From Octopus sinensis (Eukaryota), in the NCBI RefSeq assembly GCF_006345805.1, contig NC_043026.1, positions 6,014,001 to 6,078,000 of the forward strand: a DNA stretch of 64,000 bases, in the 5' to 3' direction. The stretch's first letter is position 1, and each line of letters starts with the position of its first letter. Below, piece after piece: positions 33,771 through 36,053 of the stretch. The notes beneath the pieces were generated by a model. It saw nothing but the letters and a program-made list of their open reading frames with translations, did no database searches and was not told the DNA's origin. The position numbers and the translations under genes were made by a program.

Positions 33771-36053
33771 ATGAGTTCTTCCAACCAAAATACCCGGACG
33801 ACCTATGTGTGCTCTGTGGGCGGATGTTCTAAGATATTTAGTAAGAAGCTTTACCTTGACCAACACATCCGTCAGCACACGGGAGAGAGACCATTTCATT
33901 GCGCAAATGAAGGCTGTGGCAAGACCTACTCCAGAAAAGACCACCTCAACCGACACTTAAAATGGTGTTCAGCTTCCCAGTCGGCCGGTTCCAGGGAGAG
34001 GCTAACGTGTTCTGAAAACGGCTGCTCAAAAACATTCCAGAACTTGCAGAATCTGCGTGTGCATGTACGCAACGTGCACGAGCAGAGTAAAAATTATAAA
34101 TGTCCAGTCGAAGGTTGTGGAAAAGTTTTCAAAAAGCACCACGGATTAAAACAACATGAGTTTGAACACAGCGGGGTGAACCCTTTCTCTTGCATGCTGT
34201 CTAGTTGTAAGAAATCCTTTCGCGTCTTCAGTCATTTCAAAAGACACATGAAGGTGCACGATGGATACAAATGCGAACATTGTGCAGAGACATTTGAAAA
34301 GTGGACGCAGTTAATTAAACACCGATCGACCCACCATCGGCCACTACAGAAATGTCCACACTGTGATAAAGTATTTGCTTCGAAATTATGTTTAAAGAAA
34401 CATATTAAAGTGCATTCAGAGACGCGTGAGGTGTTCATATGTTCGCGAGATGGTTGCGGACGTTACTACACAATGAAACGAAACCTTGTCGCCCACATGA
34501 AGTCCTATCATGATGGCCGTCGATTTCCTTGCTCCAATGAGGGCTGTAGCCGCAGTTTTCCATTCAAGCATAAAATGTTGGAGCACATGAAGAGCCATAG
34601 TCGTGTTCATCCCCTGAAGAAAAAATACCCCAAAAAAGGCCACCGTAAAAGATCCCTGGCGAGTCGACTGTCTGGTTATGTACCCCCTACAGCTACATCA
34701 ACCTGCCGTAGCAAAGAACTCGTCTCACCAGTTCTGCCGACAGATAAGAATTCTGTTATTTCTAAAGTTGTTACTGATAACATTAATGCTAGCCACTCCC
34801 TGGGCACAGGCCACACAGATGAACCTAAAGCCCCTGACACAGGCCGCACAGATGGCCCTAAAGCCCCTAATCAACCCTCAAAGGTTTCAGTAATTTCTCC
34901 AGTCTCGAATGATGTCAAGGTTGCAGACCGCAGTTGTGATAAAGGGTCACAAGAAATCTGTAATGCCGACAAAGAGAGGACGGCCACCAACTTGAAACCA
35001 CCTCCTCGTGACACTGTCATTCATTTAGCGTCATCAAAGCCACCCGGTAGCAGCCAGATCAAACCCACCCAGACAACGACGACTGCTCAATGTTGCAGCA
35101 ACACCAACCAGGATAAAATGAATTTGAATTCACCGAAAGAAGTAGCAACCGAAGTTAACAAGATTAAACCTAGTCGCACTCCTCTCCCGACGACAAATAT
35201 TAAATTCGCTGATTCTGGTCACAGACAGTCAAGCAGTTGCCATAAGGAAACGGTAATTACCTCCGTAACCCATCCACAGAGTCAAGACAGTTCCACCCCT
35301 GGGTATCCCAGCCAGAATTCAGTGAAGAAACCAACAAATAAATACATCTGTTCTGTCAAAAGTTGTGGCAAAGAATTTGTGTCCGCTTCTTCTTTGAAAA
35401 TCCATCTGTTTTACCACACGGAGATGCAGTGTTCTGCTTCCATGGATAGTTCTGCCAAACAACAAATGGACGATATTCTTTATTCAACCAAAGACTGCGT
35501 CGAAGTGTTCAGAAGTTCGAGGCCTTCCTCCAAACACCAACCTTGGAATAACAGTAGTAACAATGGCGGCAGCCGCAGTAACACATCTTCATGTATTTCT
35601 TCCACTTCTCCATCCCACCATTCCTCACAAACGCCAACCCAAACCCCCAGTCAAAAACACCAATTGCCAAGCTCCACTGCGACCACAGCACAAGGACCGA
35701 CTTACCTCCACCAAAAACTTCTCTGTTCCATATGCGGGGACATATTCTTCAGCAGTTCGCTGCTCAGTCAGCACCTGAGAAGCCACCCTTCGGCGGCACG
35801 CAACTCATTTTCCTGCCCCAAACCTGGTTGTGGCCAGGTGTTCTTGGAAAAATCTAAACTTGACTTGCATGTGAAAGACCACTCTAGTCACCGTTCCAAA
35901 TCTCACCCCATCTTCCAGTGTCCCTTAAATGACTGCGACATGACCTTTAAGTCCCAGTCGCAGCTGAAGACCCACGCCAATCTTCATTCCATCAAGAAAT
36001 ACTCAAAATCTAAGCAGAAACTGGCCAAAATTATTTTGGGGAAATATTTCTAA
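33771..36053 (+). CDS. GTF3A: Transcription factor IIIA (5S rRNA factor), single-exon CDS, 760 aa, 9 canonical + 4 additional zinc fingers
   Basis: Nine N-terminal fingers with TFIIIA spacing (HTGERPF linker, short HDGYKC linker before finger 6 with ..KWTQL), followed by the TFIIIA-specific motif KRSLASRLSGYVPP (human KRSLASHLSGYIPP). A possible 5'UTR acceptor TTTGCACAG| ends at 33608. Confidence 0.88.
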   Translation: MSSSNQNTRTTYVCSVGGCSKIFSKKLYLDQHIRQHTGERPFHCANEGCGKTYSRKDHLNRHLKWCSASQSAGSRERLTCSENGCSKTFQNLQNLRVHVRNVHEQSKNYKCPVEGCGKVFKKHHGLKQHEFEHSGVNPFSCMLSSCKKSFRVFSHFKRHMKVHDGYKCEHCAETFEKWTQLIKHRSTHHRPLQKCPHCDKVFASKLCLKKHIKVHSETREVFICSRDGCGRYYTMKRNLVAHMKSYHDGRRFPCSNEGCSRSFPFKHKMLEHMKSHSRVHPLKKKYPKKGHRKRSLASRLSGYVPPTATSTCRSKELVSPVLPTDKNSVISKVVTDNINASHSLGTGHTDEPKAPDTGRTDGPKAPNQPSKVSVISPVSNDVKVADRSCDKGSQEICNADKERTATNLKPPPRDTVIHLASSKPPGSSQIKPTQTTTTAQCCSNTNQDKMNLNSPKEVATEVNKIKPSRTPLPTTNIKFADSGHRQSSSCHKETVITSVTHPQSQDSSTPGYPSQNSVKKPTNKYICSVKSCGKEFVSASSLKIHLFYHTEMQCSASMDSSAKQQMDDILYSTKDCVEVFRSSRPSSKHQPWNNSSNNGGSRSNTSSCISSTSPSHHSSQTPTQTPSQKHQLPSSTATTAQGPTYLHQKLLCSICGDIFFSSSLLSQHLRSHPSAARNSFSCPKPGCGQVFLEKSKLDLHVKDHSSHRSKSHPIFQCPLNDCDMTFKSQSQLKTHANLHSIKKYSKSKQKLAKIILGKYF

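What the first reader, a model, noticed from the sequence alone, without database searches (positions are those of the whole stretch)
34689..36053. TFIIIA with a second zinc-finger module (13 fingers, 760 aa)
After the canonical 9 fingers and the KRSLAS motif, where vertebrate TFIIIA (~340-365 aa) is nearly finished, the ORF continues for ~450 aa. It has S/T/P-rich linkers, one isolated finger (YICSVKSC...HLFYH) and a three-finger cluster (CSICGD, CPKPGC, CPLNDC), then a basic tail. Inference: a lineage-specific TFIIIA with an extra nucleic-acid or protein-binding module, possibly linking 5S/Pol III control to other targets such as the abundant Pol III SINEs.
Basis: partly seen in the sequence, partly recalled or inferred. 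Interest (0 to 1): 0.72.

Follow-up and report, generated by a model that had tools for sequence, protein, structure and literature searches.

The report
Octopus TFIIIA with self-duplicated finger module
The octopus version of TFIIIA, the factor that switches on 5S ribosomal RNA genes, is an intronless gene whose long extra tail is a conserved, partly decayed second copy of the protein's own last three zinc fingers, an architecture shared by octopuses and squid-like cephalopods and not seen in 125 TFIIIAs from other animals.

Summary
Window 33771-36053 (+) is one uninterrupted 760-aa ORF (Octopus sinensis) with 13 C2H2 fingers. Fingers 1-9 and the KRSLASRLSGY motif align colinearly with TFIIIA of five phyla, so this is the TFIIIA ortholog, which NCBI misnames 'ZXDC' and 'ZNF271'.

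New here: the C-terminal cluster (F11-13 plus basic tail) is a diverged duplicate of TFIIIA's own fingers 7-9 plus tail. Its profile finds fingers 7-9, in register, as the best match in 122 of 122 nine-finger TFIIIAs from other animals. It also beats a background of 5,396 other zinc fingers.

The module occurs in octopods and three decapodiform lineages, but not in Haliotis, Mytilus, sea urchin, acorn worm, priapulid or vertebrate TFIIIA. In octopods it is under stronger purifying selection (dN/dS 0.015; F10: 0) than the canonical fingers (0.10). AlphaFold2 models four folded fingers separated by two disordered linkers.

The coding sequence is intronless in cephalopods, against at least nine coding exons in Haliotis, which suggests retrogene replacement.

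Function is inferred only: probably a second copy of the 'assembly' half of TFIIIA (A-box contact and TFIIIC recruitment). This is a new variant of a known factor, of moderate to high interest.

The parts
33771..36053 (+). Complete intronless TFIIIA (GTF3A) coding sequence, 760 aa plus stop
   Evidence: The exact protein is annotated in O. sinensis as a single-exon CDS. It is colinear with a second octopod contig.
33804..34598 (+). Canonical fingers F1-F9 (aa 12-276)
   Evidence: Colinear alignment with TFIIIA of gastropod, echinoderm, hemichordate, priapulid and vertebrates. Core HMM 349 bits. PDB best hit 1tf6, Xenopus TFIIIA. dN/dS 0.099. pLDDT 75-91.
34647..34679 (+). KRSLASRLSGY motif (aa 293-303), preceded by a basic stretch (aa 277-292)
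   Evidence: Conserved across phyla in the alignments (L300 and G302 invariant, A297 at least 90%). It lies where the 14-aa Xenopus activation domain is reported (PMC8362101, PMC1950542). The exact equivalence is from my own recollection.
34680..35336 (+). Linker 1 (aa 304-522), S/T/P-rich and predicted disordered
   Evidence: pLDDT below 35 for aa 308-522. dN/dS 0.207, 74% aa identity between octopods. Not alignable with the decapodiform linker.
34805..34868 (+). 33-bp tandem duplication (1.9 copies) inside linker 1, adding 11 aa (HTDEPKAPDTG)
   Evidence: It explains the 760-aa and 749-aa NCBI 'isoforms' and the 749-aa O. bimaculoides protein.
35343..35417 (+). F10 (aa 525-549), an isolated C-x4-C finger found only in octopods
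   Evidence: 0 nonsynonymous against 6 synonymous changes between octopods. pLDDT 72-83 with a beta-beta-alpha fold. Absent from decapodiforms. It maps to the F1 region of the TFIIIA core HMM (19-21 bits), but F4 scores as well per finger, so its origin is unresolved.
35418..35717 (+). Linker 2 (aa 550-649), mostly disordered
   Evidence: pLDDT below 50 for aa 574-647. dN/dS 0.159.
35718..35786 (+). F11 (aa 650-672), C-x2-C, counterpart of F7
   Evidence: Block alignments. F7 is the best of the nine position HMMs, but the score is weak. Its cysteines are lost in two of three decapodiform lineages.
35808..35882 (+). F12 (aa 680-704), C-x4-C, counterpart of F8
   Evidence: The decapod orthologs keep F8's H-x4-H and the following 'HDG..F.C' linker, and score best on the F8 HMM in 3 of 3.
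35913..35987 (+). F13 (aa 715-739), C-x4-C, counterpart of F9
   Evidence: The decapod orthologs score best on the F9 HMM in 2 of 3. The yeast TFIIIA chain 8ffz_A aligns its F9 region to this finger.
35988..36053 (+). Basic tail SIKKYSKSKQKLAKIILGKYF plus stop. Possible counterpart of the basic stretch and LASRLSGY motif
   Evidence: hhalign aligns LAKIILG with LAS.LSG. L-[AT]-x-I-I is conserved in octopods and decapodiforms. Modelled as a helix continuing from F13 to aa 759. The homology of the tail itself is only suggestive.

Best explanation
This is the cephalopod ortholog of the general Pol III factor TFIIIA, encoded by an intronless, retrogene-like gene. Its 454-aa C-terminal extension is what remains of a second, in-frame copy of part of TFIIIA itself. 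A diverged duplicate of fingers 7-9 plus the basic C-terminal tail (F11-F13 plus tail) is tethered to the canonical protein by long disordered linkers. Octopods also have one more TFIIIA-type finger (F10) in between. The duplication predates the split of octopods and decapodiforms. How it most likely works (inferred, not shown): in Xenopus, fingers 7-9 contact the A box of the 5S gene. Together with the short C-terminal activation sequence, they are the part needed to build the TFIIIC/TFIIIB initiation complex. A second, flexibly tethered copy of that 'assembly' half would give the protein an extra nucleic-acid or TFIIIC contact in 5S rRNA gene transcription or 5S RNA handling. Because its helix residues at the usual base-contact positions have diverged from F7-9, its target is probably not the same A-box site. 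Shown here: identity, architecture, origin of F11-13, phyletic spread, selection, predicted fold, intron loss. Inferred: the partner or target and the functional consequence.
For: TFIIIA identity. Origin of the module: hhalign puts F11-13 plus tail end to end on F7-F9 plus tail, scoring 120 against 105 for the next register with a non-cephalopod profile, and 131 against 103 with cephalopods included. The module HMM's best single domain is F7-F9 in 122 of 122 nine-finger TFIIIAs, a median of 20 bits above any other register. TFIIIAs have a median of 54.5 bits, against a maximum of 49.6 for 254 other ZNF proteins (5,396 fingers). That background includes the top summed scorers out of 1.84 billion proteins. 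With a decapod-only HMM, 122 of 125 TFIIIAs beat every background protein. Haliotis TFIIIA aa 191-297 hits window 35709-36020 by tblastn, E 2.5e-8. Shared ancestry of the octopod and decapod modules: reciprocal best in-protein domains, the same C-terminal position, and a conserved tail. Constraint: dN/dS is 0.015 for F11-13 plus tail and 0 for F10, against 0.099 for F1-9 at dS of about 0.5. Fisher p is 7e-4 against F1-9, and neutrality is rejected at p = 4e-18. Fold. Lineage specificity: no convincing finger after the motif in 125 other TFIIIAs. Intron loss. Functional context: PMC1950542 and PMC8362101.
Against: No functional data of any kind. With an octopod-only profile the F7-9 signal is significant (p = 4e-24) but does not separate at the top of the ranking. 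Single octopus fingers are individually ambiguous. The octopus inference therefore leans on orthology with the decapod module, whose margin over other animals' F7-9 is small (55.8 against 54.3 bits). In decapodiforms the module is less constrained (dN/dS 0.29) and F11 has decayed in two of three lineages, so not all of it is indispensable. Homology of the tail to the activation motif is only suggestive. Whether a second, canonical TFIIIA exists in cephalopods was tested only through annotated proteomes and a word-indexed search. Direct mRNA evidence is indirect: NCBI gene models, and contigs of about 3 kb seen in 51 sequencing runs that are colinear with genomic DNA.
Confidence: 0.6

Rival explanations
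1. The gene is a neofunctionalised TFIIIA retro-paralog, for example a 5S-RNA storage or other specialised factor in the manner of Xenopus 42S p43. The real, intron-containing TFIIIA would lie elsewhere in cephalopod genomes.
For: The intronless, retrogene-like structure inside another gene's annotated intron. An unusual architecture. Cephalopod-specific changes in canonical fingers: F2 ends in Cys, and F6 is C-x2-C.
Against: One search returned no other cephalopod TFIIIA-like protein. The O. sinensis and O. bimaculoides proteomes are in the database, and a canonical copy should score like Mytilus (315 bits) or Haliotis (265 bits). The two unlabelled TFIIIA-like hits are equally distant from all animals. 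The nine fingers and the activation-type motif are conserved at dN/dS of about 0.10 in both clades.
Confidence: 0.12
2. The extra fingers were captured from an unrelated member of the hugely expanded cephalopod C2H2 family by exon or gene fusion. The resemblance to F7-9 would then be generic zinc-finger similarity.
For: Cephalopods have large C2H2 expansions (PMC12513265). Per-finger scores of the octopus fingers are not individually significant.
Against: The block-level match is register-specific (F7-9 in 122 of 122) and exceeds 5,396 background fingers, including C-x4-C families such as ZXDC. Decapod F12 keeps F8's H-x4-H and the 'HDG..F.C' linker.
Confidence: 0.05
3. Octopods and decapodiforms duplicated F7-9 independently, so the origin is parallel rather than single.
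For: The module profiles score the other clade's module only slightly better than other animals' F7-9. The linkers are unalignable, and F10 is octopod-only.
Against: Same position and order. The tail L-[AT]-x-I-I and terminal aromatic residue are conserved, and 31 columns are invariant across clades. The reciprocal best in-protein domain is the C-terminal module, not the canonical F7-9. Both clades share the intronless state.
Confidence: 0.08
4. The duplicated A-box-type module retargets TFIIIA to other Pol III templates such as A-box-containing SINEs.
For: F7-9 are the A-box-contacting fingers (PMC1950542). The module is strongly constrained.
Against: There is no evidence of any such binding. 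The helix residues at the usual base-contact positions of F11-13 differ from those of F7-9 (read directly from the sequences). Type 2 A boxes are recognised by TFIIIC (PMC8362101). Rfam found no 5S gene in the window, only one tRNA-Cys.
Confidence: 0.05
5. The extension is a neutral or artefactual read-through tail with no function.
For: About two thirds of it is predicted to be disordered. A 33-bp repeat is polymorphic within it.
Against: The open frame is kept in at least five cephalopod lineages. Neutrality is rejected in every segment, and the fingers are more constrained than F1-9.
Confidence: 0.02

Closest known systems
Metazoan TFIIIA / GTF3A (Xenopus, human)
   Same: Nine colinear fingers, the F6-type PF22110 finger, H-x4-H in F8, and the KRSLASRLSGY motif. 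Best PDB and named database hits.
   Different: Vertebrate proteins end shortly after the motif (about 340-500 aa). The cephalopod protein adds 454 aa with four more fingers, is intronless, has a C2HC finger 2, and has a C-x2-C finger 6.
Schizosaccharomyces pombe TFIIIA with 10 fingers
   Same: Precedent for an extra finger C-terminal to the canonical set, called 'unprecedented' in PMC1950542. Similar 10-finger TFIIIA-like proteins were seen here: P0080 from Umbelopsis, and P0111.
   Different: One extra adjacent finger, not a distant three-finger self-duplicate plus an isolated finger on disordered tethers. Different kingdom and an independent origin.
Saccharomyces cerevisiae TFIIIA 81-aa domain between F8 and F9
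   Same: A lineage-specific insertion in the C-terminal 'assembly' half, proposed as a second TFIIIC docking site (PMC1950542). This is the closest functional analogy to what is proposed here.
   Different: It is a non-finger leucine-rich segment, not a duplicated finger block. No sequence relationship was tested or expected.
Branchiostoma lanceolatum tandem GTF3A gene model (XP_066287850, P0270)
   Same: Two complete TFIIIA units head to tail in one predicted protein (388 and 399 bits). It shows the kind of tandem duplicate from which a fusion could start.
   Different: The copies are near-identical, so recent, and may be fused only by the gene predictor, since a rival annotation gives a 325-aa GTF3A. 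The cephalopod fusion is one continuous genomic ORF, old, and partly decayed.
Retrogene replacement (e.g. amphioxus SYCP1, PMC5803294)
   Same: A single-exon gene stands where relatives have a multi-exon gene, and no parental copy is detected.
   Different: No poly(A) remnant or target-site duplication is visible. Loss of the parental gene is not proven.
ZXDC / ZNF271 (the names NCBI gives these proteins)
   Same: C-x4-C type C2H2 fingers, with weak similarity over about 27% of the query.
   Different: E of about 1e-39 against 1e-88 to 1e-58 for TFIIIAs. There is no colinear nine-finger match and no KRSLAS motif. The names appear to be automated mislabels.
Xenopus 42S p43 (nine-finger 5S RNA-binding TFIIIA paralog; from my own knowledge, not tested here)
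   Same: An example of a TFIIIA-derived protein specialised for 5S RNA rather than DNA.
   Different: It is a separate gene alongside a canonical TFIIIA. No second gene was found in cephalopods.

Membership tests
TFIIIA (GTF3A) | Nine tandem C2H2 fingers, colinear with TFIIIA of other phyla and with its characteristic spacings | tested here: met
   alignment; aa 2-409 match HMM positions 19-424 of a 16-species non-cephalopod TFIIIA HMM at 349 bits. Labelled TFIIIAs score 344 bits or more.
TFIIIA (GTF3A) | TFIIIA-specific finger domain (Pfam PF22110) above the gathering score | tested here: met
   32.8 bits against a cut-off of 27, at aa 157-184.
TFIIIA (GTF3A) | Conserved C-terminal KRSLASRL(S/T)GY-type motif after finger 9 | tested here: met
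   aa 293-303, identical to the vertebrate, echinoderm and hemichordate consensus. It has diverged in decapodiforms (RKKNVVSLLTG).
TFIIIA (GTF3A) | Closest named relatives and solved structures are TFIIIA | tested here: met
   after the cephalopods come Mytilus GTF3A, then TFIIIA of Haliotis, Ptychodera and vertebrates; 1tf6 is the best hit, E 1.4e-29.
TFIIIA (GTF3A) | Binds the 5S gene internal control region and 5S RNA, and supports Pol III transcription | not testable with these tools
   Needs biochemistry.
TFIIIA (GTF3A) | It is the (sole) TFIIIA of the genome | tested here: inconclusive
   No other cephalopod TFIIIA-like protein appeared. P0052 and P0111 were excluded. No whole-genome tblastn was possible.
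Internal duplicate of TFIIIA F7-F9 plus tail | The module's best match among all zinc-finger proteins is TFIIIA F7-F9, in register | tested here: met
   It is weaker for the octopod-only profile.
Internal duplicate of TFIIIA F7-F9 plus tail | The tail is homologous to the basic stretch plus LASRLSGY | tested here: inconclusive
   hhalign aligns LAKIILG with LAS.LSG. HMM alignments to most TFIIIAs stop before it.
Internal duplicate of TFIIIA (whole second copy) | F10 is a relic of F1' | tested here: inconclusive
   The core HMM places aa 512-550 on the F1 region, but per finger F4 scores 25.1 against 22.7 for F1.
Retrogene / retrogene replacement | Intronless CDS where orthologs are multi-exon | tested here: met
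   Octopus: one 879-bp HSP and a single-exon annotation. Decapodiform: a single ORF on a 54-kb genomic contig. Haliotis: at least nine coding exons over 52.6 kb.
Retrogene / retrogene replacement | Poly(A) remnant or target-site duplications; parental locus lost | tested here: inconclusive
   No poly(A) tract lies downstream, only ATT repeats. After more than 200 My these marks are expected to be eroded. The parental locus could not be searched.
ZXDC | Full-length similarity to the ZXD family (ten fingers plus a C-terminal activation region) | tested here: not met
   ZXDC hits cover only about 27% of the query at E of about 1e-39, far below the TFIIIA hits.

The most novel reading that the evidence does not exclude
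Coleoid cephalopods have fixed a TFIIIA that carries two copies of its initiation-complex 'assembly' half. The second, flexibly tethered copy has acquired its own target. One TFIIIA molecule could then nucleate or bridge Pol III complexes at a second site: a neighbouring 5S repeat, a different A-box-containing Pol III template such as a SINE, or a second TFIIIC. That would be a lineage-specific rewiring of a general transcription factor, and it became essential in octopods.
Probability: 0.12. Interest if true: 0.85.

Novelty: new variant of a known kind. Interest (0 to 1): 0.6.

Why it matters
TFIIIA is the founding zinc-finger protein and one of the most architecturally conserved general transcription factors. 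A tenth finger in fission yeast was called unprecedented. Here a whole animal clade has kept, probably for more than 200 million years (the age is my own estimate), a 12-13-finger TFIIIA whose extra module is a copy of the part that in Xenopus matters more for building the TFIIIC/TFIIIB complex than for finding the promoter. In octopods that copy is more constrained than the canonical fingers. This gives a natural experiment on what fingers 7-9 and the C-terminal activation sequence do, a question still without a metazoan structure. It also gives a clean example of retrogene replacement followed by self-fusion in an essential gene. On the practical side, the protein is mis-annotated as ZXDC and ZNF271 in the public octopus genomes.

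Tried and rejected
1. Searching with the extension alone found only octopod orthologs and marginal ZNF692 hits. The word index missed the decapodiform orthologs.
2. The exhaustive profile search ranks by summed score, so giant poly-ZNF proteins filled the top 150. It was useful only for finding P0267 and P0405 and as a harsh background. I re-ranked by single-domain score locally.
3. The last named search, with a TFIIIA core profile, returned almost only vertebrates, so the invertebrate sample stays small: Haliotis, Mytilus, Diadema, Ptychodera, Priapulus, Petrolisthes and Branchiostoma.
4. Per-finger position HMMs are individually weak (background tail fractions 0.03-0.7). I rejected them as stand-alone evidence and rejected a firm F10 = F1' assignment.
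5. The PDB profile search has no metazoan F7-9 structure to compare with and is uninformative, apart from yeast F9 aligning to F13.
6. Dating the duplication failed. The module is no closer to cephalopod F7-9 than to other animals' F7-9.
7. mRNA evidence: the decapod contigs and L006 are colinear with genomic DNA, so they cannot be told apart from unspliced DNA. No poly(A) tails were seen.
8. P0052 and P0111, considered as possible short cephalopod paralogs, were rejected.
9. The first exon of the host SKI8-like gene could not be verified from sequence.
10. Mao & Darby 1993 is not held, so equating the 14-aa domain with the KRSLASRL block rests on my memory.
11. Neither Nautilus nor any non-coleoid cephalopod could be reached with the available collections.
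Full report
OBSERVATION. The window holds one uninterrupted ORF at 33771-36053 on the + strand, 760 aa long. It is the only long ORF in the 64 kb that is not low-complexity repeat. A pattern scan finds 13 C2H2 units. Nine lie between aa 14 and 276, an isolated one at 527-549, and a cluster at 652-672, 682-704 and 717-739. A basic tail follows. KRSLASRLSGY is at aa 293-303. Everything described is present where stated.

SOURCE AND ANNOTATION. The exact protein is on record for Octopus sinensis (GCA_006345805.1, chromosome CM016888.1) as a single-exon CDS. 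NCBI calls the 749-aa form 'zinc finger protein ZXDC isoform X2' and calls the O. bimaculoides ortholog 'zinc finger protein 271'. The 760-aa and 749-aa forms differ by one unit of a 33-bp tandem duplication at 34805-34868.

IS IT TFIIIA? Yes.
- Pfam gives the TFIIIA-specific finger PF22110 above its cut-off.
- The best solved structure is Xenopus TFIIIA, 1tf6, at E 1.4e-29.
- Outside cephalopods the best named hits are Mytilus GTF3A and TFIIIA of Haliotis, Ptychodera and vertebrates, at E 1e-88 to 1e-58. ZXDC proteins reach only about 1e-39 over about 27% of the query.
- All nine fingers and the motif align colinearly with TFIIIA of a gastropod, sea urchin, acorn worm, priapulid and vertebrates.
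- An HMM built only from 16 non-cephalopod TFIIIAs matches aa 2-409 at 349 bits, within the range of labelled TFIIIAs.
- No second TFIIIA-like protein from a cephalopod appeared, although both annotated octopus proteomes are in that database. Two unlabelled TFIIIA-like hits are equally distant from all animals.
I therefore treat this as the cephalopod TFIIIA. No whole-genome search for a paralog was possible.

WHO ELSE HAS THE EXTENSION? A second octopod has the same 13-finger architecture (P0002/L006, 83% DNA identity). Three decapodiform lineages have nine canonical fingers, an unalignable linker of about 210 aa, and then the C-terminal cluster and tail. These are P0003, seen in 51 sequencing runs; P0004, on a 54-kb genomic contig; and the fragment P0405. 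None of the three has F10. The F11 counterpart has lost its cysteines in two of the three. Haliotis, Mytilus, Diadema, Ptychodera and Priapulus TFIIIAs have long tails but no fingers in them. None of 125 non-cephalopod TFIIIAs has a convincing finger after the motif. The module is therefore a coleoid feature. Nautilus could not be examined.

WHERE DID THE EXTRA FINGERS COME FROM? This is the main new result.
- The cluster has the same finger types in the same order as F7-F9: C-x2-C, C-x4-C, C-x4-C. Decapod F12 keeps F8's unusual H-x4-H and the 'HDG..F.C' linker.
- In a profile-profile comparison, the module aligns end to end with F7-F9, the basic stretch and the LAS.LSG motif. The score is 120 against 105 for the next register, or 131 against 103 when cephalopods are included in the core profile.
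- The module HMM, scored per domain over all 406 proteins fetched, ranks non-cephalopod TFIIIAs directly after the cephalopod proteins (n = 125, median 54.5 bits, maximum 64.3). The 254 other zinc-finger proteins, carrying 5,396 fingers, reach at most 49.6 (median 32.2). That background includes the proteins with the highest summed scores among 1.84 billion.
- In all 122 TFIIIAs with nine regex-detected fingers, the matched stretch is exactly fingers 7, 8 and 9. It beats any other register in the same protein by a median of 20 bits.
- With a decapod-only profile, 122 of 125 TFIIIAs beat every background protein.
- Haliotis TFIIIA residues 191-297 hit window 35709-36020 by tblastn at E 2.5e-8.
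Caveats follow. With an octopod-only profile the signal is significant but not cleanly separated: median 29 against 21 bits, p = 4e-24, with F7-9 or F7-8 as the best register in 94 of 125. Single octopus fingers are ambiguous. The octopus inference therefore rests partly on orthology of the octopod and decapod modules. That orthology is supported by position, by a conserved tail, by 31 invariant columns and by reciprocal best in-protein domains. F10 maps to the F1 region of the full HMM but scores as well on F4. It is a TFIIIA-type finger of unresolved origin, compatible with a longer duplicated segment but not proof of one. The date of the duplication cannot be refined beyond 'before the octopod-decapodiform split'. 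An amphioxus gene model with two near-identical TFIIIA units in tandem shows how such a fusion could begin.

IS IT FUNCTIONAL? Between the two octopods (dS about 0.5), dN/dS by region is as follows:
- F1-9: 0.099
- Linker 1: 0.207
- F10: 0 (0 nonsynonymous against 6 synonymous changes)
- Linker 2: 0.159
- F11-13 plus tail: 0.015
The extra fingers are significantly more constrained than F1-9 (Fisher p = 7e-4), and every segment rejects neutrality. Between two decapodiforms the values are 0.105 for F1-9, 0.46 for the linker and 0.29 for F12-13 plus tail. AlphaFold2 gives beta-beta-alpha folds at pLDDT 72-91 for F1-9, F10 and F11-13. It gives pLDDT below 35 for aa 308-522 and 574-647, and a tail helix running on from F13 to aa 759. 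The extension is thus four folded fingers on two disordered tethers, maintained by selection.

GENE STRUCTURE. Haliotis TFIIIA has at least nine coding exons spread over 52.6 kb. The octopus and decapodiform coding sequences have none. This fits retrogene replacement (concept: PMC5803294), although no poly(A) or target-site marks remain. By NCBI's annotation, the octopus gene lies in the same orientation inside the first intron of a SKI8/WDR61-like gene, whose coding exons I located at 46.8-57.4 kb. I could not verify that gene's first exon.

MECHANISM (INFERRED). In Xenopus, F1-3 contact the C box and F7-9 the A box. The part of the protein from finger 7 onward, with a 14-residue C-terminal sequence, has a role in forming the initiation complex that is separate from DNA binding (PMC1950542; PMC8362101). 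I believe that sequence is the KRSLASRL block, but this is from memory. In budding yeast, a lineage-specific 81-aa segment in the same half is proposed as a second TFIIIC docking site. Cephalopods have duplicated precisely this 'assembly' half. The most economical reading is an auxiliary, flexibly tethered contact, with nucleic acid or with TFIIIC, acting in 5S gene transcription or 5S RNA handling. The helix residues at the usual base-contact positions of F11-13 differ from those of F7-9, as read directly from the sequences. A different target from the canonical A-box site is therefore likely.

COMPARISON AND NOVELTY. The closest known things are ordinary TFIIIA, the 10-finger S. pombe TFIIIA, the yeast 81-aa insertion, and retrogene replacement. 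Three literature searches found nothing on cephalopod or mollusc TFIIIA. I rate this a new variant of a known kind: a real, conserved and unexpectedly constrained self-duplication in a textbook factor, with its function still open.

CONFIDENCE.
- Observation: about 1.0.
- TFIIIA ortholog: about 0.9.
- F11-13 derived from F7-9: about 0.85.
- Single origin in the coleoid stem: about 0.8.
- Retrogene origin: about 0.6.
- Proposed function: about 0.35.
- Overall statement: 0.6.

Noticed in passing
window 34805-34868: A 33-bp tandem duplication (1.9 copies) inside the disordered linker adds 11 aa (HTDEPKAPDTG). It accounts for NCBI's 760-aa and 749-aa 'isoforms' and for the 749-aa O. bimaculoides protein. 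This looks like an indel polymorphism or species difference rather than alternative splicing.
   Followed up: partly
window ~31287 to 57354 (+); coding exons at 46799-46906, 48568-48645, 49615-49701, 50834-50998, 52215-52379, 53710-53811, 54399-54488, 55416-55496, 57265-57354: A SKI8/WDR61-like WD40 gene. NCBI annotates its start about 2.5 kb upstream of the TFIIIA ORF, so the intronless TFIIIA gene sits in the same orientation inside its annotated first intron. A shared promoter or read-through transcription is possible.
   Followed up: partly
window 59847-59918 (-): A tRNA-Cys(GCA) gene (Rfam 66 bits, also found by ARAGORN). It is the only Rfam hit at gathering threshold in the window, and there is no 5S rRNA gene.
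   Followed up: no
window 33771-36053; proteins P0001 and P0129: The public annotations name this protein 'ZXDC isoform X2' (O. sinensis) and 'zinc finger protein 271' (O. bimaculoides). Neither genome has it labelled as TFIIIA/GTF3A.
   Followed up: yes
window 33900-33968 (F2) and 34272-34337 (F6); alignment: Cephalopod-specific changes occur in the canonical fingers. Finger 2 ends in Cys instead of His (RHLKWC, RHTKQC, RHAKLC), making it a C2HC finger. Finger 6 is C-x2-C where other animals have C-x4/5-C. One decapodiform (P0003) has lost the second Cys of finger 3.
   Followed up: no
P0270 (Branchiostoma lanceolatum XP_066287850): An amphioxus gene model containing two near-identical complete TFIIIA units plus two extra F1-F2 repeats. 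A rival annotation of the same region gives a 325-aa GTF3A. This is a recent tandem duplication, possibly fused by the gene predictor.
   Followed up: partly
P0005 (Mytilus edulis GTF3A): The F8-F9 segment is repeated three times almost identically (one G/R difference). This is probably an assembly or annotation artefact, but it is another duplication of the same part of TFIIIA in a mollusc.
   Followed up: no
P0080 (Umbelopsis vinacea) and P0111 (unnamed, Logan): These TFIIIA-like proteins have a tenth finger after F9 (aa 402-432 and 371-398), reminiscent of the 10-finger S. pombe TFIIIA.
   Followed up: no
window 1-900, 15600-18000, 25000-25700, 40100-40600, 45900-46800, 53800-54400, 56300-57100, 60400-61300: Very abundant microsatellite and low-complexity repeats produce long spurious ORFs in several frames. 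The window is otherwise gene-poor.
   Followed up: no
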